Notes: a model not told the origin generated them from the letters alone. Shown: positions 1 through 58,400, numbered from the stretch's first letter. The stretch: 64,000 bases of DNA from Lepidodermella squamata (GCA_047495785.1 JBLDXI010000012.1:558001-622000); one strand, 5' to 3'. Made by a program: numbers and translations.

Positions 1-836
1 ACACACAAGGCTACCCTAACACCATCTTCCCATACAGGTTTAGTGGCCCATAAAACCGAACCGAGCCCTGATCCGATGTCAAGCAAGTACTCTGGTTTGA
101 AACTTTGGTCCACCGCTCGAATTTCTTCGAATATTTTGACCAAAACCGCATATTCAGCTGGCAATCTCTCAAACATATACAAATAGCAATTGTAAGCGTC
201 GAATTCCATAGGCTTCCAATGATAGACAGTTTTTCTCAGCTTCGAATAAAGTCTGTTTTTGATATTTTCCTCGTAGATTTCTTCCTCTTCAGGTGTCGGG
301 TTTTGGCTACCAATATCAATCTTTGAGCGCAGTTTTTCTTCGATTTTCATTGCTCTCTCCCGTAATTCAGTGTTGTCAGTGGGGGGCAGTCGAGATTTTA
401 GATTATGAACAAACTCCGCACTAGCGCGCTTTATATCTTCCAACTTGTATTCTAAATGACAGGCTATAGTTTTGTTGCTATGGTTGCGCGAACTTACTCC
501 CTATTAGCGAAAACACAGCCGTTTGAACAGTTTCGGGAACGTTTACGACTTTGTGATTCCTCAGACCAGGGTGACGCTTGGCTTTCAGTTCCGCGGCAGC
601 CAGGCGAGATTCCAAAGCAGCATCCAGCTTCAAAGTAACATCTCTTTCTTGCGGTTGAGGAACGTGTACTTCTTGCTGTTATTTACAAATCAACTCGAAA
701 TTTCACAATTCCAAGTGCTAACTAAACTCACTGGAATTTCTTCCTCCTCTGGAGCAACGCTTTCAGGGTTAACCCTCCTTGCATTTGGCGCGCCCCTCAA
801 GGAACGGCTGAAAAACGCAACCAATTTCCGCGACAT
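1..836 (-). CDS. METTL17: Mitochondrial small-subunit assembly factor / methyltransferase-like 17 (Rsm22 family), 5' part; runs off the window start
   Basis: Hand-spliced exons 836-732, 675-498, 451-<1 (GT-AG introns of 56 and 46 nt) give MSRKLVAFFSRSLRG...RHPGLRNHKVVNVPE...LRKTVYHWKPMEF...YMFERLPAEYAVLVKIFEEIRAVDQSFKPEYLLDIGSGLGSVLWA. This matches recalled METTL17 motifs (LRKTTYHW, F(Q/K)P..L(M/L)DFGSG.GSV.WA). Arg-rich mitochondrial-type presequence. Confidence 0.9.
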
Positions 837-978
837 TTTTAATAATAATCTTTAATAATCAGTGGTTTCTACACATAACATAGAGTGTACATGCAAATTA
901 TCACATTCGGGTAAATCACGCAGTGACTTTCAAAGCATTTGCATATTTATTCGCGAGAAATGTTGAGCAAGTTTTTGA

Positions 979-1374
979 CTAGTCGTCCGCATCTTCCTCC
1001 AAGTTGATTTTCGAACCAAACTTAGCATAGAGACGAGCCTTAAGCTCAGTTAGCGACGCCGTGTAATCTTTCAGCGTTAGTTCCAATTCAGCAATTCGTT
1101 TATTCGTGACAGCTTTGTCAACTTCAAGGCGCTTTTGTACTTGCACAGGTGATAATTCGAAGAAAACTTCCCCGAGTTGATATGGAACCTTGCTATCCTC
1201 ATCAAGCAGTGCGATTTCATCGACAGATTCGTAAGCATCCTCCAAAGCTTTCAAGTAGGACTTCTTAGCATCGAGTTCACCCTTTGCCTCCTTGAAATTT
1301 GCATTTGTTGTGGCAAATTTATTGATACACTGCTGATCTTCGAAGGTGACTGCAGCATCGCCTGTTTGAGCCAT
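979..1374 (-). CDS. PFDN4: Prefoldin subunit 4
   Basis: Single-exon 131 aa ORF with VTFEDQQ.INKF, VPYQLGEVF and LKARLYAKFG.KINLE motifs. Confidence 0.95.
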   Translation of the reverse strand: MAQTGDAAVTFEDQQCINKFATTNANFKEAKGELDAKKSYLKALEDAYESVDEIALLDEDSKVPYQLGEVFFELSPVQVQKRLEVDKAVTNKRIAELELTLKDYTASLTELKARLYAKFGSKINLEEDADD

Positions 1375-3926: not shown

Positions 3927-4234
3927 ATTCAATTTATTGGAAAGGTCGCGTGAAATTAGCACAAATGCAGTTTAAGCCGAAAAGTGCCAATTTTACCGTT
4001 ACAACCTCCCTTGTGCAAATTTAGGGTTGCCTATTAATTTAATCAACATAGAGGGAACATGAAGAGAATCGTTTCTACTTAATTTTAGACAAAAGGGCTT
4101 CGAAAAATCAGCTTTCTGCTAGCGTCCACCATCTAGTATATTTGTTATCCGATGGCCTGCGAATGTTGAAGTAGCTAGAATATATTCAATGAATTACACA
4201 CTTATTTCTAGACGCTTAACCCTTCGTTTCTTAA

Positions 4235-4552
4235 ATGGCAATCAAAGTTATTCTCGAAGTGATGGTCGGCATCCTGGCTTTTAGCTGGAGAGTACAAGGT
4301 CACGGCGGTGAACACGAAGGACATTCCATGAACATGGCCTCCATGAACGCTAGCGATGTCATGGTCGATAAGCCTCCCATGAAAATGAGTTTCTGGCCAG
4401 ATGTTTTCGCCTTCCTCGGAACTCTCATGGTTACCGCAGCAATTGCTGTACCATGTGCCATTTTCGCTAGCCGTTGCCAACGTGTTGTCGGCGTCGCAGG
4501 GGTGGCTGGCGGTCCTGAATATCACCGACTCAAAACTACTTCAGTCAAGTGA
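4235..4552 (+). CDS. Uncharacterised 105-aa type I membrane microprotein with His/Met-rich ectodomain (putative Cu-binding)
   Basis: Intronless ORF: signal-peptide-like N-terminus (to VQG), HGGEHEGHSMNMASMNAS...MKMSF, one hydrophobic helix (VFAFLGTLMVTAAIAVPCAIFA), tail with YHRL. Acceptor ttctAG (4210-4211) before the ATG, AATAAA at ~4752. Confidence 0.7.
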   Translation: MAIKVILEVMVGILAFSWRVQGHGGEHEGHSMNMASMNASDVMVDKPPMKMSFWPDVFAFLGTLMVTAAIAVPCAIFASRCQRVVGVAGVAGGPEYHRLKTTSVK

Positions 4553-4808
4553 TATGGACGGCAAATGTAAACATGTCATCATTTGTTCAAGTTTATTGTT
4601 TTATATCGACTATTCGCCACCTATGGAATTTTAAATTTTCAAAAGCTGTGAGCTGCACTAATGGGGTTTTGTTATAGTCACGAGTGCTTAATGTAAATTT
4701 TTATGATCACTTATTGTAACTCAAAGAAGCAAAGAAAACGTGATTATTTTTAATAAATATGCAAAATGGATTTCAGGAAACATGTAGAGTCTCATTATCA
4801 ATTTAAAT

Positions 4809-6277
4809 ATGCCAGCAAAATCAACCTGTTGCGCTTCTATAAATTTGGCTCTGGTGAAATACTGTAAGCTAAATTATTGCATTGTCATCGATATAAATAA
4901 AATGGTTTCCATGGACTTCCAAGGGGGCAAAGCTGACGATGTAAACATGCTGCCGCTAAATGACTCGCTGAGTATTACGCTGCAAAACCCGGAGGTAAGA
5001 TGTTGCTGGCTTTGAGTCTTCAAAATAATACTGAGCGTTTTTCTAAAGGTTATTACTACGTGTGAAATTGAGTTAACTGCCATTTCATCTGGGCATAAAT
5101 TTGTCGTCAACGGAATAGAAAATAATAATGATAAACGAATTCTGAAAATGATTCAAAAAGGTAAGCCACCGTTTTTAGTTTTTAGCTATCAACTATTAAC
5201 CCGGCGACTTCACTGCTCACACCTCAGCGAAAGAACTGTCAAAGGGCGAATCAGTATTCCAGTCACACTGTGTATCAGTTGATTCGTCGAATTCTTTTCC
5301 GACCGGAGCAGGAATGGCTTCAAGTGCGTCTGGATGTGCTGCTGTTGGTACTTGCCTCGTTTGTTTCCAAGTATTAAATTCGAATTATTTTGTTGTTTAG
5401 CGTTATGCCTGGCGAAACTAGCAAAGCTTTCCATTAGCGATGCTGGAATAATAGCCCGGTATTTTATTTTGCAGTGGAAAACGATCAGTGGAGAATATTG
5501 ATAAATAACATTTCAGGATTGGCTCTGGAAGTGCATGCCGAAGTGTTTACGGCGGATTTGTACACTGGTCAGCTGAAACTGGCTTACCGCAGCAGATTTT
5601 TCCGAACAATCATTGGCCAGAACTGAAAGTCATTATGCTTATAGTGAGTGCCGTTTCCAATTATTTGATGGCTATTAAAAATCGCCCAAAATTTAGCATT
5701 CCGAGTCGCCAAAAAATACAAGCAGTCGAGATGGTATGGCTGTGAGTGTCGCAACTTCAAAATTAATGGCTAGCCGCTTGGAATGTGTGAAAGAACGCAT
5801 CGAAGAGATGAAATCGGCCATCGCACGAAAAGATTTCCCAACCGTTGCAAAAATTACTATGCAAGAAAGCAACCAACTCCATGCGATATGCCTAGATACC
5901 TGGCCGCCTCTTGTTTATCTCAACAATACATCATTCGAAATTATTCGCTTTGTTCATTTCTTGAACGATTTAGCGGGGAAAACAATGGTAGGTGTAATTA
6001 ATAAAATGTATTCGTATACAATTTTTTGTTGTATTTCAAGGCTGCGTATACTTTTGACGCTGGTCCGAATGGCTTCATCCTCACCTTGGAACAAGATATT
6101 CCCGTGATGATGAGCTGTTTGAAGGCATGTTTTTTATCTCCAGCAGAGAACATCAAAGAACGGTATGAAGAGCCTACTTTCATTCAAAATTTATCTGCTC
6201 AATTTCCGGAAAAGTCGAAAATTACCCGGGTTGTTGTTGCTGATGTGGCTTCGGATCCATTGGTGTCTATTAATTGA
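4809..6277 (+). CDS. MVD: Diphosphomevalonate decarboxylase
   Basis: Multi-exon: NLALVKY|WGK..., [15 protein letters not shown] (GHMP ATP loop), [47 protein letters not shown]. Confidence 0.95.
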
Positions 6278-6317
6278 TGATTAAAAATGGTTGATGTAGG
6301 CGTTTTATTGAGTTGAA

Positions 6318-7855
<1,538 letters not shown>

Positions 7856-19758: not shown

Positions 19759-19868
19759 TAAAACGAAGCTTGCGTTTGCGAGAGCAGTCATTTTTATTAT
19801 TTGCAATCAATTTTAACAAATTATCCAAAATAAAATCGGTGTTATAACTTGGATGGCATTTCTGGGTG

Positions 19869-21181
19869 TTACTTTTTCTTTCCAGACTTCTTTCCCTTTC
19901 CCTTCCTTCCTTTCTTTTTCGGCGCATAGAGACCAATGCCTCGTCGAGCCATGATCGTGCGCCACCACGACTGAATTTTGAGGGTCGCTCGCATTTCGGC
20001 AGCCTCGCGCTCGGCCTTTTTACGAGCGCGTTCCTTCTCAATTTTATCTTGGAGCACAACCTTTTCGTATTCTTCGTAGGTTCTTGTCATTCGTTCCAAT
20101 TTGTCGAGATCTCGAGCTTTATCAGACTTGAGCTGGTCAAGTTTTATCTGCAATGCGTCAACGTCCTTCTCGTATTTGGCCATCCAGAAGTCTCGCTTCT
20201 CCTCGAGTTCTTTCTCGTGCACGCGAAGATAATTCTCGATTTCATTATTGACGCGCTGTTCTTCCTCGAGTCGTACTGTCAAGAGCTGAAAATGAAATCA
20301 ATTCAACAGTCAATTCATGATATTTTCTGATCAACTCTTCTTACTTTCTTCTCTTCTTCCAATTCTTCCTCGGATAAGCGACATTTGTGTTGAGTCTGGG
20401 CAACGTTGACGTCGGTCAGTTTTTTCACATACTTTTCTTCCATGTTTGTTTTGGCTTTAGTTTCCTGAAGCTGGTCTTTCAAGTGAGCGTGATACTCAGC
20501 TCGTTGTTGCAATTCAATTTCTTTCTGACGGTTGACTTCAACGATTTGCTTTTGCAAACCTTTGATACGTTTTTTCAGGTCTTCTTCTCTGTATGAACAT
20601 TGGAAAAAGTTATGAATGAGCTTTATGTTAGTAAGTAAGTTTAAACCTGTGGATATATACCTTCAGCATAGACATTCGCTTATTTTCAGACGTCACAGCA
20701 TCAACTAGACATTGAAACGATCCATTTAATCTAAGATCACCTGTGAGACGCGTGAGAACGTTTTGACAGAATTCCCTGTTGTAGAAGGGACAGACAGTTG
20801 GTTTAAAAATTCCGATAATGAATTCTTGTCAGCATACCTGTCTGCCTTAATTTTCTCGAGGTTCTCAGGAGTCAGTGGATTCTGGCTCAGCCCTCTCTCA
20901 TATTTGTGCATGCCGTCACGCACATCTTTCCCAATTGCAGGGTCGCGTTTCCCAGGTTTGACGTCACGCGAAAATGACTTATCCTCAATCGCCCGCTGAT
21001 TCTCCACGACTTGTCCGATTTGCTCCGCAAGAAAGTCTTGAACGTTTGGCCGAGACTCGAAACTTTTGGGCATAATGCTGCCCAAAATATTGAGTTGGTC
21101 AATACAGTCGTCCACCACGCTGGAAACCTGGCAAGCTTCCAGGTTATTAAGCTGGTAGAGATATTGTAAGGTATGAGACAT
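19869..21181 (-). CDS. IQCG: Dynein regulatory complex subunit 9 (IQ motif containing G)
   Basis: Spliced coiled-coil protein with DCIDQLNILG, LKDQLQETKAKT, FWMAKYEKD, IQ motif KIQSWWRTIMARRG and a Lys-rich tail. Confidence 0.9.
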
Positions 21182-21263
21182 CCTTAAAATGGGTATCTAA
21201 AAATAAAACACGCTGATTCACAAAATTTATATTTAATTTAACTATAAATTGATGGAAAGATAT

Positions 21264-21542
21264 TCAGTACGCCTCGGCCACAGCGATAACAGCTTTGCTA
21301 CAGTTTTCATCGAGCTGGCCATCGGATGCGAACTCGAGGTCTTGTATGTCGCAAGAATACACTTTCTCACCATGAACCCATATCTCGACGACATTCCAGT
21401 CATCAAGCTTTTCAAGGATCACTTTGTGACCAGCCTGCGTGAGCTGATTAATAAGACCTTCAAGCCGTTCCTCTCGATACTCTACTATTCCAGCCTGCCG
21501 ATATGGTCCATACCTTAAGACAGCGGTCGTATTTTGTGGCAT
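21264..21542 (-). CDS. C10orf53: UPF0728 protein (C10orf53 homologue)
   Basis: 92 aa: LRYGPY..G.VEYR..RLEGL...DWNVVEIWVHGEKVY.CDI.DLEF..DG.LD..C..A..AV..AY. Confidence 0.9.
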   Translation of the reverse strand: MPQNTTAVLRYGPYRQAGIVEYREERLEGLINQLTQAGHKVILEKLDDWNVVEIWVHGEKVYSCDIQDLEFASDGQLDENCSKAVIAVAEAY

Positions 21543-22160: not shown

Positions 22161-23103
22161 ATTAATTTTATGAAAAATTCCACTGTCAAATTTATTAGTT
22201 ACATTAATATATTTATATGATTTTCAGTTGAAGTTTTGTTTGGAAGTGAAAATTTTCATGTTGTCCCTATCGCCGGTAAACTGACCGCACTCTGTGCTGT
22301 GCGCCCGCCGGATCCTGTCTTCTGCCTCAAGCAGCCTTTGCCGGTAGCCAGTGCCCAGTGCACCCTGAGAGCAGCTAGCATCCTGATTACAGAGTTAAGA
22401 AAAATTAGTTTAAAAATTCCGACTTGAGGGTTGAGGGATTTTCAGTATTGCAAATTGCAATGCACGATCTCAGTAGTGCAAGAAAGCATGTGAACGAACA
22501 TATTTTGGGGCTGGCAGATGAGGCCAAAACACCCGCTACAACCACCTTCCTGCCTTATACTGCTCAAGGTCGGCTGTGGCGTTCTTCAGGCGAGTTAGAT
22601 CAACGAGGCAATCGAAACCAGCATGTACTGCGGAATCAGGCCAAAAATCCACTTGGGAGTAGGTGTCATAACTGTTTCATGTTCATATCGATTTTTTTCA
22701 GCAGGTATTCTTGGTTAGCTTACCCATATAGTGAAGTAATTGTGGCACTGCCAAAAATAGTTCCATGTATCCCGAAAACTCGCCAGTGACTAGTTATGAA
22801 ATTAATTGTCTTTAGAAAACGAGCCTTTATTCTCCGCATCATAGCCCTTAGCGTGTTCTTCGATGGCCCCCAGAGGAGAATGAGTTACTGAACGAATAGC
22901 TGATGCTGTTTAAATGTTGAGGATGGGTTAAGCATCCGCAATTTATTGAAGCTTCTTGTAGAAAATCTTTTCTATCTAAGGAACTTGTTTCTACGCTCAT
23001 GTATTGCTCTGTTGATTTACCAATTATCTACATCTTCAATTCCTATATTGCGTAACAAATCCCGTACCTATTTTTTATTATTTTTTAGATGCTTAAGACA
23101 TAA

Positions 23104-27017: not shown

Positions 27018-27744
27018 GCGGATACCTGCATTTTCCAAAAATTGTTGCCGTTGTGTGAACTGTATATATGAAATATTAATTTGATCGAAATGTTCGATGA
27101 CTATCTTGTGTTATTATTACTCTTCGGTCGATTTTCAATAATAATACTATTATTAAAGGTGTCGTTGCGATGTTATTATATTAATAATATTATTACCATT
27201 ATTATTATGTAAAACCGCGTCTTCTAATTTTTTCTGAAAATTTTGCATTTATTATATTGATAGCGTATTGTGCTATAAATTCGTTTCCTGTAACAAGCAG
27301 GCGTCCTGTCGTTCGAATTCAATAATTTTTGTTGAATTTTTTCGTGTTTTCATACGTAATCACCATCAGTGTGTCACTCAACAACCAAAATAATGCAGTT
27401 AGGCGGAATCATTTTATAATTCGCTCACGTAATGGTATTTTCGAACAAAATTTGCCCTCTAGGATTCATTCGTAATTCCATGCTGGAAACTTGATAAGAT
27501 CAACATTCAGGCTCAAATGTATACACCTGCCCAACTCAATTAACGTCACACGTAAGGCTGAGGTCTTAAGCTCGGCATAATAGCGTAAATCGTCACTGAT
27601 GTGAAAGTAACGTTATGCTCACGCGATTCTTTTATTTGTGTCTGAAATGAAGGCATTAATAAAGTAGAACTGCTGGAACGGCGTGTCTTTTGTCACTGAA
27701 TCAAATTTAATGTAATTTTTCAAATGGACACATCATAAAAAGTA

Positions 27745-27788
27745 TGAACACTGTTGCAACAACTTGTGGCCCTGAAAAGGGCCGGTTC
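27745..27788 (-). promoter_or_regulatory. Histone mRNA 3' stem-loop plus conserved downstream element (H2B)
   Basis: GGCCCT-TTTC-AGGGCC stem-loop (27768-27783) followed by ACAAGTTGTTGCAACAGTGTTCA. Confidence 0.95.
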
Positions 27789-27824
27789 GGAGTCAGAAGA
27801 CGGTGTTGATGTCTTCAGAGCAGC

Positions 27825-28199
27825 TTATTTCGAGCTGGTGTACTTGGTGACGGCCTTGGTGCCTTCCGAGACGGCGTGCTTGGCGAGCTCACCAGGCAGC
27901 AGGAGACGCACAGCTGTTTGTACCTCTCGACTGCTGATGGTGGCCTTCTTGTTGTAGTGGGCCAGGCGCGACGACTCGAGGGCGATGCGCTCGAAGATGT
28001 CGTTGACGAACGAGTTCATGATGGCCATGGCCTTGCCGGAGATGCCGGTGTCCGGGTGGACCTGTTTCAACACCTTGTAGATGTAGATGTTGTACGACTC
28101 GCGGCGGCGATGGCGCTTCTTCTTCTCGCCGGCGGTCTTCGGCTTCGCGGCCTTCTTCGAACCCTTCGACGCGACTTTACCAGTAACTTTGGGCGACAT
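27825..28199 (-). CDS. H2B: Histone H2B (replication-dependent type)
   Basis: Intronless; [22 protein letters not shown]...[26 protein letters not shown]; 3' stem-loop. Confidence 0.99.
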
Positions 28200-28586
28200 G
28201 ATCGATTGAAATCAAGCGAGGATTGATAAGCAAATAATTATTATAAGCTTCCGAACACCGATGCACGCACTTCCGCTCTCATTTTAACATCCGGCCGGCA
28301 TTAGTGCGCGCACCCTGGCGCATCCGGTATTCAAATTATTTATGGCGCGTGCCTGGGTGACCAATGAAAGTGGAGCGCGTGTCGTAATGAGGCGCGCGCT
28401 TTTATGACTCGCGCCTTGATTGGTTAGTAAAGCAGTAAACAGATTATGAGAATTTCAAAGATAATCAAAAGGCGCGAAATAAATGCCAAAGCGGGGTATA
28501 TAAGGAAAAATCAGGTGTCGGCAAAATTGTTCGTGCTCAGACTGCAAATTTCGCATTCTTTCCGCTTTTAAAACTCAACAACAAAA
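28200..28586. promoter_or_regulatory. Bidirectional H2A/H2B promoter
   Basis: 387-bp divergent spacer with CCAAT (~28361), ATTGG (~28419) and TATATAA (~28497) elements. Confidence 0.7.
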
Positions 28587-29030
28587 ATGTCCGCCCCAGC
28601 TGCTGGTCGTGGTAAGGGAGGCAAGGCCAACCGCCAGAAGGCGAAGACCAAGTCGTCGCGTGCCGGTCTCCAGTTTCCGGTCGGTCGTATCACCCGTCTG
28701 TTGAAGCGCGGTAACTACGCCGAGCGTGTCGGTGCGGGTGCGCCCGTGTACCTCGCCGCCGTCATGGAGTACCTGGCCGCTGAAGTGCTCGAGTTGGCCG
28801 GCAACGCCGCTCGTGACAACAAGAAGACGCGCATCGTGCCTCGCCACATCCAACTGGCGATCCGCAACGACGAGGAGTTGAACAAGCTGCTGTCGCACGT
28901 TACGATTGCCCAAGGCGGTGTTCTGCCCAACATCCAGACCGTCTTGCTGCCGAAGAAGACCGCCGAGGCACCCGCTGCCAAGCCGGCGTCTGGTGGCAAG
29001 AAAAAGGCCGCCGCTAGCCAGTCTCAATAA
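28587..29030 (+). CDS. H2A: Histone H2A with H2A.X-like extended C-terminal tail
   Basis: Canonical core ([12 protein letters not shown]...GGVLPNIQ) plus tail [25 protein letters not shown]. Confidence 0.97.
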
Positions 29031-29068
29031 GCGACTCTCTTCCATCCATCGCAGCTTTTAAAAAGCAT

Positions 29069-29112
29069 GAACCGGCCCTTTTCAGGGCCACAAGTTGTTG
29101 CAACAGTGTTCA
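29069..29112 (+). promoter_or_regulatory. Histone mRNA 3' stem-loop plus conserved downstream element (H2A)
   Basis: Stem-loop 29074-29089; the 44 nt are identical to the H2B element. AATAAA at 29131 and 29143. Confidence 0.95.
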
Positions 29113-40445: not shown

Positions 40446-43444
40446 TCACTGCCAGGCTTTTTTCAGCTCCTTAAGCTGGACTAGGTACCGGAATACGAAT
40501 GTAGCAGCCAGTAGGCCGACTGTGATCATAATAATGAATGCGTAATCGAAGTCTTCTTTGAGCATGTCGAACATTTTCGAGGGCCAAACGCGGGCAAAGT
40601 ACAAGTCCAAGCCCGAGACGAATAACAGGCTGGTTGATTCGAGGCCGGAAGATGCCGTATACATGTAGGAGATGCGGTCCAAACTCCGGTTGTAGTTGAC
40701 AAACGACTCGGGGTGCATGAGGACCTCAGGAATGTAAGGCGGAATGCCTTCCTCTGCGTGCTCCTGCGTGGCGGTGAGCAAACGCCGTGGGTTGAGCAGC
40801 AACTTCGGCACCTCTAGAATGCGACCCGAGGCCAGACCGAGAAGGACTGATCGCGAAGTAATCCCGCGCCGTGAGGTGGTGATCACCATCGATCGAACCA
40901 CATCATTGAGCACGTACGCCTGTTTCAGCACCATCGGAACATCCGGACCGTAATAGTCGAACGAAGAAAACATGGTGGCGTTGCGTTCTTCTTTGCCTTC
41001 GAATAGCTCGATTACTGCGACTTCAGTTCTGCGCATTTGCGAGTTCCAATAGCTGTAGGTTACGAAATTTTCCGCATTCACAGCAAACACAGGGCCTCGA
41101 GCGTGGCGATGCTGACCTTGGTAGTAGAACCGACCAGAGACAGAGTCGACAAGGTACAGAGAAATCACGTCTGGAAAAATTACCCACAATTAGTTGTCGA
41201 AATATGAAATCATTATTTATTTTTACCTTTATCAGTGTCCTTCCGATCTGTGGAAAGTGTAGAAGTGACGACGAAAACGAGATTCGGATTCAAATATCGA
41301 TATAGCACGGTTCGGTCGGCTAGTACGACAGCTTTCGAATAGACTCGCTCGTCCGGCCTGCGCTCAGCCACAGTCACTATATGCTCGCCAGCCGGTAACT
41401 TCACAGACCAGGTTTTGGCAAGGTTTATGAAATCATTTGTCGAGGTCTGTCCAATCTGAAAACCGGTTATCTCAGGGTTGTTGATAATTTTCTCCGTAAT
41501 CAGGTACAAATACACGTCGCTGGAGGTAGTTTTCACGAAATTTGTCAACGATTGCGGATACACATAGACCGAAGACCGAGTCGGTAGAATGAACAAAATA
41601 GGAATAATCTTCTGCTCAGGATGAGAATGCGTAAATGGCCGAATAACACCCGGCAAAAACGGCAGGGTCAACCGTTCGTCAACTTTGCCAGTCAAACCAT
41701 CAAACGTCACTAAGCAAACTTGGTCGTTAGAAGACGCATCTTGACCTACAACCGCGACTAGTGACGTCATGCCAGTGACGTCTGTGCCACGGAGAGGGAA
41801 AATTGACAGAGGTCTACAATCGCCGAGAAGAAGGTCCCAAACCACTACACCAGTCAGCGAGTGAATAGCGTAGACCTTGCCAGGTGTTGTTAGAACTATA
41901 ATCAACTTTTCTAGGCCGAATTTATCACGATGGAGCTCCACCGAAACGTCACGCCCATCACCAGTGTGTCGGCTGATTTGATGATGCAGAAGGCTGTGCT
42001 TAGTATCCTTATGAAAATGAAGTAAAGCCCCGAAACCTCCGTTAGAAAATGTGTCGATCAAGTCGAAGACAGTTGAGAACAGAATGTCACTTTCAAACCG
42101 AACTCGCCGGGCGAACGACACGAATATATTAGAACTCTGAGACACAACTTCGTCGGCGATATCGGCGAGATACCCTGGAAGAGGGAGGTCGAAGAAAATC
42201 GATGAGACAGCTTGACCGAGGCCTTCGTCGCGAGTCCATTTGACCGCGCCAGCCTGGACAAAAACCAGAGTATCGTACTTGGTTCGGATGAGGCTCCTGA
42301 GAATAGGAGCGTTGCCGCCTGCAGCTGCTCCTCGTTTTTTGAGAACGATCGGGAACAAATTTGCAATTCCTTCATTCATCAGCTCTCGAGACGTGAAAGC
42401 CGAATCGCCCACTTGGCTGGTAGTTTGTTCGTCGAGGAGAGCGAGTCTGTAGCTAAAGCCGCCGTCATTCAGCAGGGCAAAGGCCGCATCTTTCCCGTTA
42501 TAATCCACCGTGGAAGCATCAACGACAGCAGCGCCTGATTCAAATTTGAAGCGACCTTGATTGAGTAAGTTGCAAAGGATCTTTTTGCCGTTTTCATAAG
42601 TGAGCAAAGCGGTATTCGAGACAACTTTCATGTCAGCAATTTTATTGCCAGGTGTCTGAGTCAGCGCGCATGACTCACCATCCACATATCCAGCAGTTGA
42701 CGACGCAGAAAATTCGCGGAAGGTGACTGGGCCAAGCATTTTTCCGCTCTCGAGTAAGCAAACGAATGACTGGCCATTGGAAAGACTTCCACAGCTGACG
42801 ATTTGATCATTTAAATTACCGCTAGATAACTTGACCAATTTTGCGCTGTTTTCAACAGCAGCTTGGTAAACAGTCACAGCTCCAGAGATATCCTGGGAAA
42901 TGATGCAGCCAGTAATTGCGTCGTTACATCCGACAATGAATTGAGCAGCATTTTGGTTGGAAGGGATCGGCATGCACTTGTAATTGTTCCCCCTCAGCAA
43001 ACACATATTGCCATCAGTTGCGAATAATATAGTGTCTTCGGTAGTTCTAGTAAGTTTAATAGACTCGCTGTCGCTGATTGGTAGAACGAGTTGAGTTTTC
43101 AATATGCCCTCGGGATAAAAACACCGAGCAACATTCCCCGAAAGAACAAAAACGCAATCACTGTACAATGTGACCAGCGAAACTCGTTCACCCTGACTTA
43201 ACGAGTGGCGCCATATCACACTGCCGTCTTTCGCAGCAAGAGCTCCAATTACACCGGTTTCGGCTGCGGCGACGAAAATCGCTCTGCTTCCGGTACCATC
43301 AGGCACAGCATCATAAGAGGCAAACGATACTCGACCGACGTAAGACTGCTTCCAATCAAAAATACCAACCTGGTCTTCGTAAAGAGCTAATGAATAACCG
43401 AATAATAGCCCGAAGAATAAGCTCTTTAATGCAGTTAAATTCAT
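40446..43444 (-). CDS. EMC1: ER membrane protein complex subunit 1
   Basis: Signal peptide then ALYEDQVGIFDWKQ; WTRDEGL; RDKFGLEK; VLADRTVLYRYLNPN; SGLESTSL...FDMLKEDFDY plus C-terminal TM ending LKKAWQ. One intron at ~41172-41227. Confidence 0.97.
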
Positions 43445-43725
43445 ATCTAAAAATGAAAAATACACACATCGTCAAATAAATATTTAATTGATTATGTCGT
43501 TAACATAGTGGTAAATAGCACCAATCGGATGCACAACTCGTGGTAGAAATTGGAATAACAAAAACTATTTGGGGTAGTGTAAATTTCAAGGTAATCAAAA
43601 CTGGAGAGCATTGTGATTTTAAAAAGCTATGAGACGCAAAGCAGCAGTGTTGCACAACAAAGACAGCTGAGAGTTCAGCAGGATTATAAGATCAGATTCG
43701 ATGGTAAATATTGCGAAGAAAACGA

Positions 43726-44451
43726 TCAGGCTCGCGATACACCATCATTCAACTCGTTTTTCAAACGATTAATGACATGGCGTATTCCACCAGCAGGATC
43801 TCCCGGGAACATGCCACGAACATTCACCAAAATATTTTTCAACTTGTCATTTGGAACTTTGGCACTAGCGGCAGGTCCGGAGGAAACATACAGCATGTTA
43901 TCTTCGGCTGAATAAAGAATGAGGAAATGCTCGCCGCAATGCGTAGCGCCTCGGAACCATTTTCTTTTGAGCTGTTCAGCAAATGACCGGGAAGCTCGAA
44001 GGCGAGCATCAGCATTTTCCTCGCGGCCGAATTCTTGAATATGCGACTTTCCCATTTTGCGTAAAACAGCGACAGCAATCAAAAAGTTTTTGTCGCCATT
44101 GTCCGGAGGGCAGACTCGTCGAAAAGCAGGAGCGCCAGGATGAGCTAAGTCTTGAACTGATGAGCACGGGCACTCGAAGTCGACCTGCTGGCTAAGTACT
44201 TCTCGCAGCTCTTTCTCCAGTGAAAGCGCCTCTTCAATAGTCAGCAGCTGATCTGGATCGCAAACCAAAGCCGAGAAACCTTTTTCTGAGCTCAGCTGAC
44301 GACCAGCAACACGAGAGCATCGAGCAACATCGTGCTTTAGATGGGGGTATGAGTCGGGCAGCCAAGTTTTAGGCTCATCTGCTTTTCTGGCGTTCTCCGC
44401 GCAGCCTCCACAGACAGCCAGCGATAAAACAATGCACACTTTAAGATGCAT
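43726..44451 (-). CDS. MOLO-1-like TPM-domain protein, apparently secreted
   Basis: Signal peptide; W.PDSYP...C.R...VCDPDQLL; IAVAVLRKM; FAEQL...W...C...LILYS.ED..LY.S.G pattern recalled for the MOLO1/TPM family. No C-terminal TM. Confidence 0.7.
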   Translation of the reverse strand: MHLKVCIVLSLAVCGGCAENARKADEPKTWLPDSYPHLKHDVARCSRVAGRQLSSEKGFSALVCDPDQLLTIEEALSLEKELREVLSQQVDFECPCSSVQDLAHPGAPAFRRVCPPDNGDKNFLIAVAVLRKMGKSHIQEFGREENADARLRASRSFAEQLKRKWFRGATHCGEHFLILYSAEDNMLYVSSGPAASAKVPNDKLKNILVNVRGMFPGDPAGGIRHVINRLKNELNDGVSRA

Positions 44452-45655: not shown

Positions 45656-46597
45656 ATGCTGGAGAAGTTGAAGGCTCGTGAATTCACACCTGTGGCAAAC
45701 GAAGTATTACCGCTGCCGACGTATCACAAAGCTGAGTTGGCGCTATGGGTTGACCTTGCTGTTGATGATTGCGACAGATTAGAGGAATTGTCGTCATCCG
45801 ATGAAGTAAAACAGTTTCTAGCTACTCGCTTTCAGCTGGAAAATTTTGAGAGTGATATACGAGTTGCTATTCTGTTGGATCTTTATCTATACACTGTTCA
45901 ATACGCGAAGTCGAATGGCTTTGACAAGCCTCAGCTTTCAGCTCTATTTACCATCATCAAAAACACCCATGAGATCGCCACCGAGACTTCGTTCGGGAAT
46001 CTACAACAAACATTTGCATATTTCAGAGATGCGTTGCTGAGACATTCAGTGAACAGGCCACCGTTTTCTGTCGGAGTTTTTACCCCTGAGCAGGCTCGCC
46101 TGATCACAGAATACGTAATCACAAGCTACTTTAGGCACTTCAAGTTATACAAGTAACGTTGTGATGATCTAGCATTGATGATTTTTATTTTGGCTAAATA
46201 TCATTGCAGGTATGCATTCACTCCGCTTGTCAAGCTCGACATTCGCTTCGATTATCCCGCTATTCCAGAAACCGCCGAAGAGCAGGCGGCTCGGGAAGTG
46301 TCGTTTGCCGCGGATCCCAGTCGAATCGGGTCTGCTCTCAAAGCTGAGGAGCCACCGAAGTCAGGCTCGAAGCAGAAGTCGACTCTCTCCGAGCCTCAGC
46401 CAGAGAAAGAAAAGGAGGAAGAAGGCGTCTCGGCTTTAAAGCAAATCGTTAGGGAGGAGATTGTTACCGAAGTCGAGAAAATCAAGTCATCTTTGCAACA
46501 AGCCCTGAAGGAGACTGAAGAGCGACTATCCGAACGTCTTGCAAAAGCTGGCGTCGGAAGTGAGAAAGGAGGAAAATCTCCGCAAAAGAGAAAATAA
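45656..46597 (+). CDS. CFAP119: Cilia- and flagella-associated protein 119 (CCDC189, CLAMP domain)
   Basis: ILLDLY.Y...F...Q.SALF.I...H; F...LL.HSV.RPPFS..VF...YF.HFKLYK|YAFTP; one intron at ~46153-46209. Confidence 0.88.
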
Positions 46598-46730
46598 AAT
46601 AAAATAATGTGACGTTGAAATGGTATTTCTGTTAATTAGAAGCATACCCATTGTTTACAAAATGAATAGAAATCAATATATTCTATCACTGTTTTTGTGA
46701 AATGATTTCGTAGGTAATGACTTTGAATTA

Positions 46731-53644: not shown

Positions 53645-55295
53645 ATGCCCAGCGGTTCGTTGCTTGTGACAGACGACCAGAAGAACGCTCTTGCATTACT
53701 GGCCGAACTGGAAGATGCGGGTTCGTGTTTTTTATTTATGTATAGTGTTTGCTTTGTTAATTTCAACAGGGCTCTTTAATTATACGAAATGGTTAAAAAT
53801 ATTATTTTGATACCTATCGTTGTTGTTTTTTGATGGGTGTTCATGTTATACGCTGTAGGGAAACACGAGTTTATCGCGCAAGCTGCCAACTTCCTGAGCG
53901 CCGGAATCAACCGCAAGCTGATTTCAGTTGCGAGCAAGAAACTGAACCGGGACACTGCCGACGTGGAAGCGTGCATGTTTGCCATTATGAAGTTGTTTAC
54001 GGATTCTGCGAGGCTTGAGGTTTGCGCTTACGCAGATACTCGTTGATTACACGCTGCATAAGTAGACAATGCGACCCGTGCCGCTGGTGTCTGTCGTCAG
54101 CTGGCCGGTTTCGGTGTCGTCCTTCACCGTGCCCATGCTATTGTCCATAGGCACTTCTGTTTAATGTCGTATTTTCCCATACCTGCCTGTGCTTTAGCGA
54201 CGGCGGCGGGTTGTTTGCACATTTTCCTACATTATCTCGTGAACCCGCTATTTCCCTTTTCATCGTGTGTCACTATCATAATAGTAATGCGAGTATTATA
54301 CCGCATTTAGTAGGTGTCTACACCTTGATCATGATCCAAGCTGCGATTTGCCTATTGACGCTCTTTTGTCACACCGTCCCTAGAAGAAACCAAGTGGTGG
54401 CATTAACTATGCAGTAGAGCATGCCTTCACTGACCACCCTCTATCTAAGAGTATTCCGATATATTGACATTTGCCTCTCTCATCCTTTAGTCGAAAGTGG
54501 ACGGTGTGTTGTGAAACACCACGAATTGTGTAGCATGTTTGCGTTTGTGCGCCTCTTTCAAGAGAGAAGACCGATCCTTGGCGAGATGCGGCGTCGTATT
54601 CAGGGCATTCAATTTTTCGCAAGGCTCGTAATAATGAAATTATTATTGTTATTACTACGTTCATCATTATTACCGCAGATTTATAGCGCGCGCACGTCTC
54701 ACGTCGTAAATTTGATGCGACGCCTAGCGTTTAATCGTGTAATTTATCGTTTTTTAATTACGACAGCTATCTGGTGAGGACGTCGAACGCTCACTCTCCG
54801 ACCAGCTCGGCGACATTTGGCTCCAGTCTGGCTGCGTCGCCAAGTTTTGTCAGGTTTATTCGTCGGCCTTATCCGGCATCCGACTCATGCTGAAAGCCAA
54901 GGCCGAGCGCGTCTCGCTGCTTCAATTCCATGATTTAGATTGGCGTTTAGAGGCCGAGGTGTGTTTCGTTTTATAGTCGCTGCTGTTGATTATAATAGGA
55001 GATTTATTATTATTATTATTATTTCACTACTGGCGCCATGTGTTTTCGTATTACATAGGTCGCGAACCGGTTTGCCCAAGACTTACAGCCGCCTAATGTT
55101 AAACTGTCGATTCTTCTCGAGCTTAATGGGCCCGTTGACAACAGCATTACTGATGCAAACACTAATTGTGGCGCCGCTGCTCGCCACGTTTTAGAAACCG
55201 ATGTACCTACCCTTGCTCACATTACAAAAACTCTTGAGCAAGCCCTGCAACACGGCAAGGACAGGCATTCCAGGAGGCTTGCGAAAAACCTGTAA
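53645..55295 (+). CDS. COMMD2: COMM domain-containing protein 2
   Basis: Exons approx. 53645-53720, 53859-54019, 54767-54958, 55059-55295: A.NFL..G.N.K....A.KKLN, FHDLDWRLEAEVA.R, LETD.PTL.H....LEQAL...K..H.RR. Confidence 0.88.
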
Positions 55296-55484
55296 TTAGA
55301 CCCAGACACGCGAAATATGTTAATTGCTTGCTAAATTTTTGACTCGTGGACAAACCAAATCTAGTCAATGATTATACTTTTATTACCTAAACTGATTCTC
55401 GATTAATAATCATTCAATTCTTTCCGCATCTAGATATTATAAAAATGAATTATGTTATTAAATAATTAATTGATTGCTCAACTC

Positions 55485-58400
55485 ATGACTCGGATCCGGG
55501 GTGAATCTCATCCTGCTATGTCAGCCATGACCGACAAAAAATCTCAGCAGTATTCTTCTGGTCTCATGTCGCTATTTATTAGCAATCGGCCTTTCATCTC
55601 ATCTTATTCACGAAATTTGGCTTTGCTCATCGTGTTCGGCTCATTATTACCCTGTTTGGTATCCTGCGCTGGCCCAGTGATGCTTAATATCAAACAGGAC
55701 CCAGTCAACCCCATCAGATTGAACCTCGTATCAGCGGCGAATGACCCGCCGTTCACTGTTATGTTTGCGTTTAAAACGTGTCGAAACGTCGATATTGTTC
55801 GATTTTATCGAGGTGCTGGGAATATTTTAATCGGCACTGTCTCTTTAAGAGATTCCTTCCTCGGATTTTGCATGGAGCGACCGAAACGGTGCGAAAATTC
55901 CGAGGTGAAATTGGCGCTCAACGAGTGGCATATAGTCCGAATTTCACCGTACGGAACTTCAAATGACCAGCTGCTCTTCCAGACTTTTAGGCCAGACGGA
56001 GCTTTTCGCACCCCGACGGCGCTGGAAAGTCGTTTAATTTCATTTTCATCGTCATTTGCCGTCACAATATCAACAGCGCTATACGCAGAAGTGCCAGCAT
56101 CATTTCGCGGCTGCTTCTCGCCATCGTTGGGCTTCGATCTAGGCCTCATTTCGTCTTCTGACGACGCTCAGTCTTTCTTGGTCGGCGATGGCAGTTGTTA
56201 CATGGATGTTGCATGGCCGTCGAAATCTGGGCGCAGGGTTTACGCTGGCGAGTGTTTCATCAACGTTACGTGTCCTGATGGCAATGTGTGCCAGAGGTGT
56301 TCGGTGGACGAGCCCGATTACTGCACTTGCGTGCCGCCCTACTCGTCGTCATCTCAGATTCAAGATAACGGCGCAGTTATCACTCAATGTCGCATGATGC
56401 GGCTCAACTCGCCGTGCCGTTCGAACCCGTGCCGGTCGGGCGGGACCTGCCTCACGCAAGTCGACGCGGCCACAAATCAGACGACTTTTTCGTGCCTCTG
56501 CCCGCCCTTATACACCGGGCAGTTGTGCGACGTGGCGATCGACGCGTGCCAGCCTAACCCGTGCCTGAACGGCGGCATTTGCATGAAAGACAGCGCAACA
56601 GGCCAGGCGACGTGCCAGTGCCACGGAACAGGTTTGTTTTTGTTCACGCAAGACAGCCGTTAAGATGCGCGCGTTGTTTGTTTAACATGCGACCCGATTT
56701 TCATTCACAACATACTCGCTACTAATTACAAATTCCAATCGTCGGTCGTCGGCAGCCTGTGTCTCTAATGAGATGTTGCGTCAAGCCAAGTAGCAATAGG
56801 TACACAGCGTGTTGTTGTCTCAGCGGTCTCTGCCTACCTACCAATTTTTAATTCATAGCGTTTTTCACTCGATTATTTTTCAGCGTCGTCGATGATTGAA
56901 TGAGCTAAGTGATTTGCGGCGTCCAGGTGCGCGCGGCTTTTCTTTAAATAACGCGGAAAAATTCAAGAGCTACGATCGTTGATCGCTGCTTATTGCGATT
57001 ATTTATAGCTTTAAAACGTAGCCCTCATTTTGTAAAATACAAACGGATAGCGGAAAGAAAACACAGCGAGCGGGCCTGTAAACAAAGATGAAATTTAGCA
57101 ACAGCAGCAGCTGCTATTTATTTATTCGCATTATGATGATTATTATTGTTATTCTATGGCGACTAAATTATTGTTGTTGTTTCGTGCGGCGCTGTTGTTT
57201 GTTGAAATGTTGTTTCCTCTCGCTGATCGACGACGACGGCGAGCTGCTCCCTTTTATCGATTTCCTATTTTTAAGCGCCCTGGCATTTTGACTCTACCTA
57301 AGTGACTGTTTTTAGCAGCAGCAGCGTCGCCCTCAGGTGTTATCACCTTTCAAAACAATAATGACAATAACAGCAGCAGAAAATAATAATAACAGCACGC
57401 GTGCCTTAATAAGCTTATAGTCAGCGCACAAATTTTGCGGCACATCGGCAAATTAATAAAAAAACACTTTGAAACTCGGCCTAGTAAACACGCCGCCTAT
57501 TTTTCGTCGCCCGCACGCCCCTTCGGTCAATGGCTACTTGTCGGAAAAATAGCCGTATGATGACAAATGAAAAATCATTAAAAGTGTGCAGTGGCCTGTA
57601 GCAGCGGCGCCTCTGTGTTTGTCCGACAGTAGTTGGCCATTGTACGGCGATGGCGATAGCGGTGGGAAGAAAACCTCGTCGTTTTCAGCGTTGCTATAGC
57701 GCTTGGCCATCAGTTATCATCATGACATGTGTCAACAACGCGTAAAAAAGGACAGAATGTGCGAGCGCGTGGTAAACAATAAAATACCGTCCGAGTTACC
57801 TGTGCGCTATATAGCTGGCTTGTTTGTTTGTCAGTTGGTCGGATTCGGCTGCTGGTGTTGGTGGCAATGTCTTTGAGCGCGTAAATACATGCATAGATGA
57901 TAGAAATTACCGCTAGCTATTTATTACCGCGGCGCGCTTTTCGGCTTGAAAGCTCGAATCATTGGTCTTGGTGATGATAGTCTCGTGGCCTTTGTTGAGA
58001 ATAAACGAGCCGTGTATTGCTACATTCGCTCGCGTGCGGTCGGGCCATGATGATAATAATAGCGATAATAATGATAAAGAAATTTGAACTCGGCAGAAAT
58101 TAATTTCGCTTCATTTCTCAGGCTTTGATGGACCGCAGTGCGAGCACGACATCGACGAGTGCTCAGTTCCTAACGTAACGCCGTGTGCGAGACCGAATGC
58201 CGACAGGTGCTTCAATTTGCCGGGCTCGTACTGGTGCAGCTGCAAGACCGGCTTCACAAACCAGACGTGCGCTGACCCCGTTAACCCGTGCGAAAAATCT
58301 ATGTGCCGCAATGGCGCCACTTGCGTGCCACTCTGGCCGCCGCAGCAAGGCCGTAAGATCGGCGACATTCCGCTCTCGGTGTCGCGCTACATTTGCACGT

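What the first reader, a model, noticed from the sequence alone, without database searches (positions are those of the whole stretch)
836..55485. Window-wide signature of operons resolved by spliced-leader trans-splicing
Seen: same-strand stop-to-ATG gaps of 142 nt (PFDN4>METTL17), 256 (microprotein>MVD), 40 (MVD>CCDC102), 82 (C10orf53>IQCG), 281 (MOLO-like>EMC1), 133 (CFAP119>SVBP) and ~190 (COMMD2>crumbs). Most non-histone genes have a yAG acceptor 0-52 nt before the ATG (e.g. 869, 1398, 4211, 6299, 8673, 21197, 23088, 33883, 43447, 44456, 45638, 46713, 55433), often just after an AATAAA/ATTAAA. First genes are preceded by long U/pyrimidine-rich stretches (21570-21850, 44460-44700, 31400-31790) resembling outrons. 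Known: this is the layout of SL-resolved operons in nematodes, tunicates and flatworms. Inference: this lineage has polycistronic transcription, which may be undescribed for it.
Basis: partly seen in the sequence, partly recalled or inferred. Interest (0 to 1): 0.8.

Follow-up and report, generated by a model that had tools for sequence, protein, structure and literature searches.

The report
Operon-like gene pairs with unpaired splice acceptors
In this very compact animal genome most genes carry a lone intron-end signal just before their start codon, and seven neighbouring gene pairs are packed too tightly for a separate promoter. This is the layout of operons resolved by spliced-leader trans-splicing, but no RNA evidence or leader gene could be found.

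Summary
All seven stop-to-ATG gaps are exact (142, 256, 40, 82, 281, 133, 189 nt), and all 13 cited acceptors exist, one of them 3 nt off.

"Any yAG within 52 nt" is a weak criterion, because 76% of shuffled sequences meet it. A matrix built from the window's own 50-62 nt introns gives a real signal. Start-proximal sites score above the antisense strand (p=3e-5) and above random intergenic windows (p=1e-9).

These acceptors mostly lack an upstream 5' splice site. In 8 of 13 downstream genes they sit 18-40 nt after AATAAA or ATTAAA. Six lie 0-4 nt from the ATG, which argues against their being transcription starts.

The same layout recurs in the only related species found, known from ENA metagenome contigs (55-83% protein identity). 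Its intergenic DNA does not align with the window's.

The sites are almost all UAG followed by a purine, unlike cis introns.

Spliced-leader trans-splicing with tight operons is the best reading (about 0.6), but it is unproven. No SL RNA gene or transcript was available. The lineage is a fast-evolving, unplaced animal, so whether this is new for it cannot be settled.

Verdict: probably a new member of a known kind, of moderate interest.

The parts
979..1374 (-). PFDN4 coding sequence, single exon. It is the upstream member of pair 1. Its own acceptor-like site TTTTTAG|A ends at 1398, 23 nt before the ATG.
   Evidence: Prefoldin_2 E=5e-15. The relative's orthologue is 70% identical. Acceptor.
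837..978 (-). PFDN4>METTL17 spacer, 142 nt. AATAAA is at 951-946, ATTAAA at 856-851 and 843-838. The best matrix site is AAG at 850 (5.8 bits). This is the weakest of the seven pairs.
1..836 (-). METTL17 (Rsm22), 5' part. The ATG is at 836 and the gene runs off the window.
   Evidence: Rsm22 E=8e-10. Synteny with L002.
4235..4552 (+). 105-aa 'microprotein' gene. Its acceptor-like site TTTCTAG|A ends at 4211, which is also a TCTAGA. A TATATT lies about 30 nt upstream of that site.
   Evidence: 50% identical orthologue in L002..
4553..4808 (+). micro>MVD spacer, 256 nt. AATAAA is at 4752-4757. Acceptor TTTCAG|G ends at 4776, with an alternative TGTAG|A at 4787. A strong donor-like GT (9.2 bits) is at 4693.
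   Evidence: The chance rate of donors at this score is 0.44 per kb.
4809..6277 (+). MVD (mevalonate diphosphate decarboxylase), multi-exon.
   Evidence: MDD_C E=3e-37. tblastn to L002.
6278..6317 (+). MVD>CCDC102 spacer, 40 nt. ATTAAA is at 6280-6285. Acceptor TGATGTAG|G ends at 6299. The ATG follows 18 nt later.
6318..7855 (+). CCDC102-like coiled-coil gene.
   Evidence: 48-75% identical exons in L002. Coiled-coil Pfam hits only.
21264..21542 (-). C10orf53/UPF0728 gene. Acceptor-like ATTGTAG|A ends at 21564.
   Evidence: UPF0728 E=4e-32..
21182..21263 (-). UPF0728>IQ-motif gene spacer, 82 nt. ATTAAA is at 21237-21232. Acceptor TTTTATTTTTAG|A ends at 21197 (10.4 bits), 15 nt before the ATG.
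19830..21181 (-). The 3' end is approximate.
   Evidence: IQ motif. DRC10_N (weak) in the L006 orthologue. 56-84% identical exons.
43726..44451 (-). MOLO1-domain gene. Acceptor TTTTTTGCTAG|A ends at 44456, 4 nt before the ATG.
   Evidence: MOLO1 E=1.5e-11..
43445..43725 (-). MOLO1>EMC1 spacer, 281 nt. ATTAAA is at 43488-43483. Acceptor TTTCATTTTTAG|A ends at 43447 (11.7 bits), 2 nt before the ATG. No donor-like site in the spacer.
   Evidence: The relative has the same layout.
40446..43444 (-). EMC1.
   Evidence: Beta-prop_EMC1_N E=1e-22. 55-56% identical to P0001.
45656..46597 (+). CFAP119 (CLAMP / C1a-32). Acceptor TTGATTTTAG|A ends at 45638 (11.2 bits).
   Evidence: CLAMP E=1.6e-29..
46598..46730 (+). 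CFAP119>SVBP spacer, 133 nt. AATAAA is at 46598-46603. Acceptor TTTCGTAG|G ends at 46713, 17 nt before the ATG.
   Evidence: In the relative the gap is 66 nt, with AATAAA 30 nt before TTTTAG|G.
53645..55295 (+). COMMD2-like gene (identity not confirmed). It has longer, atypical introns. Acceptor-like TTATTAG|T ends at 53602.
   Evidence: The last exon gave no Pfam hit.
55296..55484 (+). COMMD2>crumbs spacer, 189 nt. Acceptor CATCTAG|A ends at 55433, which is also a TCTAGA, 51 nt before the ATG. A short uORF lies between them. Only a non-canonical AATAAT lies upstream of the acceptor.
55485..64000 (+). Crumbs-like gene with EGF repeats. It runs off the window.
   Evidence: EGF domains
23068..23103 (+). 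The strongest lone acceptor: TTATTATTTTTTAG|A ends at 23088 (15.4 bits), 15 nt before the KDM6 ATG at 23104. Comparable lone acceptors precede other genes: ion channel (16875), eIF5A (31794), g33910 (33886), CUB2 (38430, minus strand) and PCCA (50100, minus strand).
27744..29110 (.). Divergent H2B/H2A pair with 3' stem-loops. This is an internal control: there are no acceptor-like sites (scores -5.9 and 3.2), and H2A has a TATATAA-type promoter.

Best explanation
The window is a gene-dense stretch of a compact, fast-evolving animal genome with introns of 50-62 nt.

Shown: most non-histone genes carry a U-rich tract ending in UAG followed by a purine, 0-56 nt upstream of the start codon. In nearly all cases this acceptor has no partner 5' splice site upstream.

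Inferred: these are outron acceptors that receive a spliced leader in trans, and the leader supplies the 5' UTR.

Shown: seven tandem pairs are packed so tightly that the upstream gene's poly(A) signal lies about 18-40 nt before the downstream gene's acceptor. The start codon follows a further 2-32 nt on. No room is left for a promoter between the 3' end of one gene and the start of the next.

Inferred: each pair, and the triple micro-MVD-CCDC102, is transcribed as one pre-mRNA. [quoted passage not shown] Upstream genes and stand-alone genes also have the acceptor, so a single leader type would serve both, as in tunicates and flatworms.
For: 1. Gaps and stop codons are exact.
2. Start-proximal sites match the window's own cis-intron acceptor matrix far better than antisense, random intergenic or shuffled sequence. 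Six of 21 genes have a site of at least 9 bits within 60 nt, against 4.4% expected (p=2e-4).
3. The acceptors are unpaired.
   - The best donor at cis-intron distance (40-80 nt) is below 5 bits for 28 of 31 sites. Seed donors have a minimum of 5.4 and a median of 8.6.
   - Within 30-410 nt upstream of 19 first-gene acceptors there are 7 sense donors of at least 6 bits, against 15.3 expected and 17 on the antisense strand (Poisson p=0.015).
   - No donor of at least 5 bits occurs in the spacers, apart from a 5.7-bit site in the window's PFDN4>METTL17 spacer and the donors in micro>MVD in both species.
4. Six acceptors lie 0-4 nt from the ATG: EMC1 in both species, MOLO in both, and the relative's micro and METTL17. 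A transcription start there would give a leaderless mRNA.
5. A canonical poly(A) hexamer lies 18-40 nt upstream of the acceptor in 8 of 13 downstream genes, against 1 of 20 first genes (Fisher p=7e-4).
6. The layout is conserved in the only relative (55-83% protein identity, collinear over three blocks). Intergenic DNA does not align, yet the median acceptor score at its 12 orthologous starts is 7.9 bits.
7. Histone genes lack the signal and have ordinary TATA promoters and 3' stem-loops.
8. Published rule: SL trans-splicing occurs at unpaired acceptors (PMC1488885). In Oikopleura the trans-splice AG is usually followed by A (PMC6389100). Here 23 of 26 TAG sites are followed by a purine, mostly A.
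Against: - No leader sequence, SL RNA gene, trans-spliced read or polycistronic transcript was seen.
- Nothing like an SL RNA is conserved between the window and about 103 kb of the relative.
- Much of the matrix score comes from sense-strand T-richness. Mononucleotide shuffles reach a median of 6.0 bits against 7.3 observed.
- Strong acceptor-like sites are common in the window. There are 93 at 9 bits or more, and only 6 are start-proximal.
- The sites are TAG in 26 cases, CAG in 2 and AAG in 3. Cis introns are TAG 25, CAG 15, AAG 5 (Fisher p=0.005). Shared spliceosomal recognition does not obviously predict this difference, so a different signal is possible.
- Divergent spacers in the relative are only 365-383 nt for two promoters. 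Short distance alone therefore does not exclude promoters in the 130-280 nt gaps.
- micro>MVD has a strong donor in the spacer in both species.
- uATG depletion between acceptor and start is not significant.
- Four weak sites (METTL17, g8663, CUB1, C10orf53) score below 6 bits.
Confidence: 0.6

Rival explanations
1. The acceptors are real but are used in cis. Each gene would have a short non-coding 5' exon farther upstream, for downstream genes inside or before the neighbouring gene. The 5' UTR intron would end at the start-proximal AG. Transcription units would overlap, with no leader added in trans.
For: - micro>MVD has a donor-like GT of 9.2 bits in the window and 10.4 bits in the relative inside the spacer. 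The chance rate is 0.44 per kb.
- The relative's micro has a GGTACATT donor 54 nt upstream of its TAG|ATG.
- The relative's KDM6 has an 8.6-bit donor 146 nt upstream, and the window's micro has a 10.1-bit donor 359 nt upstream.
- The COMMD2-like gene shows that introns of 100-790 nt with weak donors exist here.
Against: - Donors are depleted, not enriched, on the sense strand upstream of first-gene acceptors: 7 against 15.3 expected.
- Eleven of 13 spacers contain no donor of at least 5 bits.
- For the 40, 41, 66 and 82 nt gaps, the 5' exon would have to lie within the upstream gene.
Confidence: 0.15
2. The T-rich TAG|R motif is a core-promoter or initiator element, not a splice site. It could be a lineage-specific Inr of the TTA(+1)GA type, or a TCTAGA-like element as in Oikopleura testis promoters. 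Every gene would then be transcribed on its own from a very compact promoter.
For: - The near-exclusive use of TAG followed by a purine differs from cis acceptors.
- The sequence fits the pyrimidine-purine start rule and resembles the arthropod TCAGT initiator (my own knowledge).
- TATA-like hexamers sit 28-33 nt upstream at micro, g33910, C10orf53 and the relative's MOLO.
- Three of the nine TCTAGA sites in the window lie within 52 nt of an ATG (p=8e-4).
- TCTAGA is a known promoter element in Oikopleura, and its AGA can coincide with a trans-splice site (PMC6389100).
- Divergent promoter pairs fit in 365-383 nt in the relative.
Against: - Six sites are 0-4 nt from the ATG. Transcription starting there would give leaderless mRNAs, which animal ribosomes initiate on poorly (established knowledge).
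- Only 4 of 20 first genes have a TATA-like element at the right distance.
- The long U tracts abutting the AG (up to 15.4 bits) are what 3' splice sites look like.
- TCTAGA is not enriched overall: 9 observed against 11 expected.
Confidence: 0.12
3. Chance and composition. Compact genomes have short tandem gaps, and AT-rich, T-skewed 5' flanks produce AG sites after T runs with no function.
For: - Any yAG within 52 nt is expected in 76% of shuffles.
- Shuffles reach a median of 6.0 bits.
- There are 71 other strong sites in the window with no donor of at least 6 bits at 40-80 nt.
- Starts taken from a prokaryotic gene caller in further relative loci show no clear pattern.
Against: - The observed sites exceed antisense, intergenic and shuffle controls.
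- The TAG and purine bias is not explained by composition. Best hits in random intergenic windows are CAG 357 against TAG 298 (p=5e-7).
- The poly(A) signal to acceptor spacing and the conservation in a second species also argue against chance.
Confidence: 0.08

Closest known systems
Caenorhabditis elegans SL1-type operons (little or no intercistronic sequence)
   Same: - Same-strand genes.
- Canonical AAUAAA in the upstream cistron.
- The trans-splice acceptor almost abuts the 3'-end formation site (described in PMC1488885).
- Short introns with U-rich acceptors.
- A very short distance from acceptor to AUG.
   Different: - Here this is the common form (seven pairs in 64 kb), not a rare class.
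- The acceptor is UAG|R rather than UUUUCAG.
- The organism has motile-cilium genes (UPF0728, CLAMP, a DRC10-like gene), so by my knowledge of nematode biology it is not a nematode.
- The leader is unknown.
Tunicate operons (Ciona intestinalis, Oikopleura dioica)
   Same: - Compact genome.
- One acceptor type for both operonic and stand-alone genes.
- Tiny intercistronic regions: 0 nt in Ciona and 23-30 nt in Oikopleura (PMC1488885).
- The AG is usually followed by A in Oikopleura, and TCTAGA overlaps some trans-splice sites there (PMC6389100).
   Different: - Upstream cistrons in tunicate operons mostly lack AAUAAA (PMC1488885). Here 8 of 13 have it.
- No tunicate appears among the 120 listed KDM6 hits or the 14 named of the 20 EMC1 hits looked up.
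C. elegans SL2-type operons
   Same: Tandem clusters of functionally unrelated genes. Stop-to-ATG gaps are 40-281 nt. Downstream cistrons have acceptors.
   Different: The distance from poly(A) signal to acceptor is about 18-40 nt here, against about 100 nt with a U-rich element in C. elegans. There is no evidence for a specialised second leader. First and downstream genes carry the same kind of acceptor.
SL trans-splicing lineages with no operons reported as of 2021 (rotifers, copepods, amphipods, ctenophores, hexactinellid sponges; PMC7986045)
   Same: The KDM6 tree puts the window's long branch weakly (SH-aLRT 82) beside rotifers and a copepod. Both of those groups trans-splice.
   Different: That placement is probably long-branch attraction. 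Protein identity to rotifers is no higher than to molluscs or spiders. Operon-like pairs are present here.

Membership tests
SL-resolved operon | Two or more genes on one strand separated by a very short spacer | tested here: met
   Seven pairs have gaps of 40-281 nt. The relative's orthologous gaps are 41-377 nt.
SL-resolved operon | An unpaired 3' splice acceptor upstream of each downstream cistron | tested here: met
   Matrix scores are 5.0-11.7 bits for the seven window genes. No donor of at least 5 bits occurs in five of the seven spacers. The exceptions are micro>MVD and a weak one in PFDN4>METTL17.
SL-resolved operon | The upstream cistron's 3'-end signal lies upstream of the acceptor, leaving no room for a promoter | tested here: met
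   AATAAA or ATTAAA lies 18-40 nt before the acceptor in 8 of 13 downstream genes.
SL-resolved operon | An SL RNA gene in the genome (leader exon, GU donor, Sm site) | tested here: inconclusive
   None was found in 64 kb plus about 103 kb of the relative. The tests were Rfam, a scan for a donor followed by an Sm site and a search for conserved non-coding DNA. The rest of the genome was not available.
SL-resolved operon | Mature mRNAs of different genes share a non-genomic 5' leader joined at the acceptor AG | not testable with these tools
   No transcripts of this species or its relative are in the collections.
SL-resolved operon | A polycistronic primary transcript spans the spacer | not testable with these tools
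   No RNA data.
Oikopleura-type TCTAGA promoter element | TCTAGA enriched at a fixed distance (22-52 nt) upstream of transcription starts (PMC6389100) | tested here: inconclusive
   There are nine TCTAGA in the window against 11 expected. Three lie 0-52 nt before ATGs. Transcription start positions are unknown.
TATA + initiator core promoter at the TAG site | A TATA-like element about 28-33 nt upstream of the putative start, and a workable 5' UTR length | tested here: not met
   Only 4 of 20 first genes have a TATA-like hexamer at that distance. Six sites lie 0-4 nt from the ATG.

The most novel reading that the evidence does not exclude
A fast-evolving animal lineage has SL trans-splicing and abundant tight operons. 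It has essentially no representation in public protein data: one metagenome-derived relative among 15 billion proteins. Its trans-splice acceptor code (UAG followed by a purine) differs from its own cis introns. Unlike tunicate operons, the upstream cistrons keep canonical AAUAAA signals that abut the trans-splice site. This would be another lineage with SL trans-splicing and operons, and a case where trans and cis 3' splice sites are told apart by sequence.
Probability: 0.35. Interest if true: 0.6.

Novelty: new member of a known kind. Interest (0 to 1): 0.45.

Why it matters
Spliced-leader trans-splicing and operons have a patchy distribution across animals. Whether they arose many times or were lost many times is still debated (PMC7986045).

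A further lineage with tight operons would add a data point. This one branches so far from sampled proteomes that its EMC1 is only 27-36% identical to any named sequence.

A trans-specific UAG|R acceptor would be a handle on how the spliceosome distinguishes outrons from introns.

There is also a practical consequence. Gene predictors that ignore this layout will fuse or mis-start genes in this genome.

If RNA data instead show independent promoters, the window becomes an example of extreme promoter compaction with a TAG-type initiator.

Tried and rejected
- **Transcripts by exact protein.** I looked up PFDN4 by exact sequence to find transcripts. It is not on record.
- **Homologue searches.** PFDN4, EMC1 and KDM6 gave only one related species, from ENA metagenome assemblies, and no RNA-derived contigs.
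- **JGI metagenome scan** with an EMC1 alignment found no close relative.
- **Lineage placement failed.**
  - The KDM6 tree puts the window on a 2.27-substitution branch, weakly beside other long branches.
  - The best named EMC1 hits are a moth, a millipede, a tick, echinoderms, a nemertean, an ostracod, Schistosoma, and even algae and a fungus.
  - Sample identifiers are not in the literature library.
- **SL RNA hunt found nothing.**
  - Rfam on the window and on seven relative loci.
  - A scan for a donor followed by an Sm site gave 11 hits, none in a stretch that blastn finds conserved between the window and the relative. An example is window 52357.
  - blastn for conserved non-coding DNA found only histone stem-loops.
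- **More gene starts.** I tried extending the start set using prokaryotic gene-caller starts in relative loci L019-L027. The starts are unreliable and no clear pattern emerged, so I did not use them.
- **TATA position test.** Only 4 of 20 first genes fit.
- **uATG depletion** between acceptor and ATG is not significant (p=0.19).
- **Intron finding from ORFs alone** was too noisy. I replaced it with 29 seed introns, then 45 filtered introns on coding strands.
- **Intergenic distance as an argument** was rejected. Divergent spacers shrink to 365-383 nt in the relative.

Full report
**What the window is.** It is a compact animal genome segment with about 44% GC. It has no tRNA genes and no Rfam matches. 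Its introns are tightly sized at 50-62 nt. Pfam identifies these genes:
- PFDN4
- METTL17 (Rsm22)
- MVD
- two large CUB-domain proteins
- a channel with a cyclic-nucleotide-binding domain
- an IQ-motif axonemal gene
- UPF0728 (C10orf53)
- KDM6/UTX
- an H2A/H2B pair
- eIF5A
- EMC1
- MOLO1
- CLAMP/C1a-32 (CFAP119)
- a propionyl-CoA-carboxylase-type biotin carboxylase
- a crumbs-like gene with EGF repeats

SVBP and COMMD2 could not be confirmed.

**Checking the observation.** All seven stop-to-ATG gaps have exactly the stated lengths, and each follows a correct stop codon. All 13 cited acceptors exist; 33883 is really 33886. All 13 are TAG, and 11 are TAGA.

It is met by 21/21 genes, but also by 18/21 antisense strands and 76% of shuffles. 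The claimed 'outrons' are only mildly T-rich, at 0.35-0.40 against 0.31.

**A stricter test.**
- I built donor and acceptor matrices from introns chosen by reading-frame constraints on coding strands. There were 29 seeds, then 45 filtered introns. Their acceptors are TAG 25, CAG 15 and AAG 5.
- I made the matrix blind to C versus T at position -3 and took the best acceptor within 80 nt upstream of each ATG.
- For 31 non-histone ATGs (21 in the window, 10 in the relative) the median is 7.3 bits.
- The comparisons are 4.6 bits for antisense (paired Wilcoxon p=3e-5), 4.1 for random intergenic windows (p=1e-9) and 6.0 for mononucleotide shuffles. 24/31 sites reach 6 bits, against 50% expected (p=0.002).
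- Six of 21 window genes have a site of at least 9 bits within 60 nt, against 4.4% expected from the window-wide density (p=2e-4).

The signal is real. It is partly compositional, and such sites are not rare: there are 93 at 9 bits or more in the window.

**Are the acceptors paired?**
- At the cis-intron distance of 40-80 nt, the best upstream donor is below 5 bits for 28 of 31 sites. Seed donors have a minimum of 5.4 and a median of 8.6.
- Over 30-410 nt upstream of 19 first-gene acceptors, sense-strand donors of at least 6 bits are depleted. There are 7, against 15.3 expected and 17 on the antisense strand (p=0.015).
- Eleven of 13 spacers in the two species hold no donor of at least 5 bits. 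The window's PFDN4>METTL17 spacer has one weak site, at 5.7 bits.
- The main exception is micro>MVD. It has a 9.2-bit donor in the window, at 4693, and a 10.4-bit donor in the relative. The chance rate is 0.44 per kb. That pair may use a cis intron.

Unpaired acceptors are what defines a trans-splice site (PMC1488885).

**Position relative to neighbouring signals.**
- In 8 of 13 downstream genes, a canonical AATAAA or ATTAAA lies 18-40 nt upstream of the acceptor. This holds for 1 of 20 first genes (p=7e-4).
- Where the 3' UTR is long (micro, MOLO1), the poly(A) signal sits at the far end of the spacer. The stretch from 3'-end signal to next ATG is then only about 40-60 nt.
- Six acceptors lie 0-4 nt from the ATG: EMC1 and MOLO in both species, and the relative's micro and METTL17. 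This is normal for trans-spliced genes. It is hard to reconcile with a transcription start at that point.
- Histone genes are a clean negative control. They have no acceptor, a TATA box, and conserved 3' stem-loops.

**Comparative evidence.**
- Only one related species exists in the searchable data. It is known from ENA metagenome assemblies of one BioSample.
- Its proteins are 55-83% identical to the window's.
- Gene order and orientation are collinear over window 1-7800, 19150-26950 and 33300-46600. Six of the seven pairs are covered, and all six are conserved. Their gaps are 129, 201, 377, 41, 269 and 66 nt.
- Non-coding DNA does not align at all. Even so, the U-tract plus TAG sits 0-35 nt before 11 of the 12 orthologous ATGs (65 nt for the relative's CFAP119), with a median of 7.9 bits. 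The poly(A) signal lies at the same distance for MVD, EMC1, IQCG and SVBP.

**An unexpected feature.** The start-proximal sites are TAG 26, CAG 2 and AAG 3. This differs from cis introns (p=0.005) and from the best hits in random intergenic windows, which are CAG 357 against TAG 298 (p=5e-7). The next base is a purine in 23 of 26 (p=0.002).

In Oikopleura the trans-splice AG is 'usually followed by an adenine'. A TCTAGA promoter element there can overlap trans-splice sites (PMC6389100). In the window, three of the nine TCTAGA copies coincide with start-proximal acceptors.

The bias keeps the initiator or promoter rival alive. I rate that rival lower because of the sites 0-4 nt from the ATG, the long U tracts, and the lack of a positioned TATA in 16 of 20 first genes.

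**What could not be done.**
- No transcripts of either species are in the collections.
- No SL RNA gene was found in the DNA at hand.
- The lineage could not be placed. It is an animal with motile-cilium genes, so by my knowledge of nematode biology it is not a nematode.
- Its EMC1 has a single 56% relative among 1.84 billion cluster representatives. After that, hits are 27-36% identical and taxonomically scattered.
- The KDM6 tree puts it on a very long branch.
- Whether trans-splicing is 'undescribed for it' therefore stays open.

**Comparison with known systems.** The layout works like operons with very short intercistronic regions.
- The closest match is the C. elegans SL1-type operon, which keeps AAUAAA.
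- It also resembles tunicate operons, which mostly lack AAUAAA (PMC1488885).
- The poly(A)-signal-to-acceptor distance is shorter than the roughly 100-nt intercistronic region of C. elegans SL2-type operons.
- SL trans-splicing is known in many animal groups. As of 2021, operons had been reported only in some of them (PMC7986045).

**Verdict.** The architecture is real and conserved, and spliced-leader trans-splicing with operons explains it best. I put confidence at about 0.6, and for now the case rests on sequence inference only. If confirmed, it is a new member of a known kind with one unusual detail, the UAG|R acceptors.

Noticed in passing
window 3476-3543 / 3859-3926 and 50257-50291 / 50406-50440: Two MITE-like elements, defined by inverted repeats. 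The arms are 68 nt (97% complementary) and 35 nt (91%). Both lie in the long gene-poor spacers.
   Followed up: partly
window 29577-29939 (+): An ORF with a weak reverse-transcriptase (RVT_1) match. It is probably a retroelement remnant between the histone pair and eIF5A.
   Followed up: no
window 27744-27789 and 29069-29110: Histone 3' stem-loop regions after H2B and H2A. Apart from a low-complexity repeat inside the CUB1 gene (14758-14866), they are the only DNA outside protein-coding sequence that aligns with the relative. The matching element in the relative is Rfam RF00032. The H2A protein ends in ...SQSQ, which is H2A.X-like.
   Followed up: partly
window 4693 (micro>MVD spacer); L002 minus strand, 65 nt after the micro stop: A strong 5' splice-site-like GT sits inside the spacer in both species, at 9.2 and 10.4 bits. 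It suggests a conserved intron in the micro 3' UTR or the MVD 5' UTR.
   Followed up: partly
window 23086-23103 and 33884-33909: The KDM6 and g33910 acceptors share the string TAG|ATGCTT. Each opens a short upstream ORF before the real start.
   Followed up: no
window 53645-55295: The COMMD2-like gene has introns of about 140, 790 and 100 nt, with GTTCGT, GTTTGC and GTGTGT donors. Introns elsewhere are 50-62 nt with GTAAGT-type donors. Its last exon gave no Pfam hit.
   Followed up: no
loci L019-L027 (relative species): The relative carries at least 30 dispersed divergent H2A-H2B pairs, set among unrelated genes. The window's exact H2B sequence also occurs on a 526-nt ENA metagenome contig.
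   Followed up: partly
window 7856-8279 versus L002 1-4790: Synteny with the relative breaks right after the CCDC102 3' end. This is the only breakpoint seen in about 37 kb of comparison, and it lies outside the putative operons.
   Followed up: no
A strong lone acceptor, TTTTTTATTAG|T at 16875 (11.2 bits), lies 21 nt before the ATG.
   Followed up: partly
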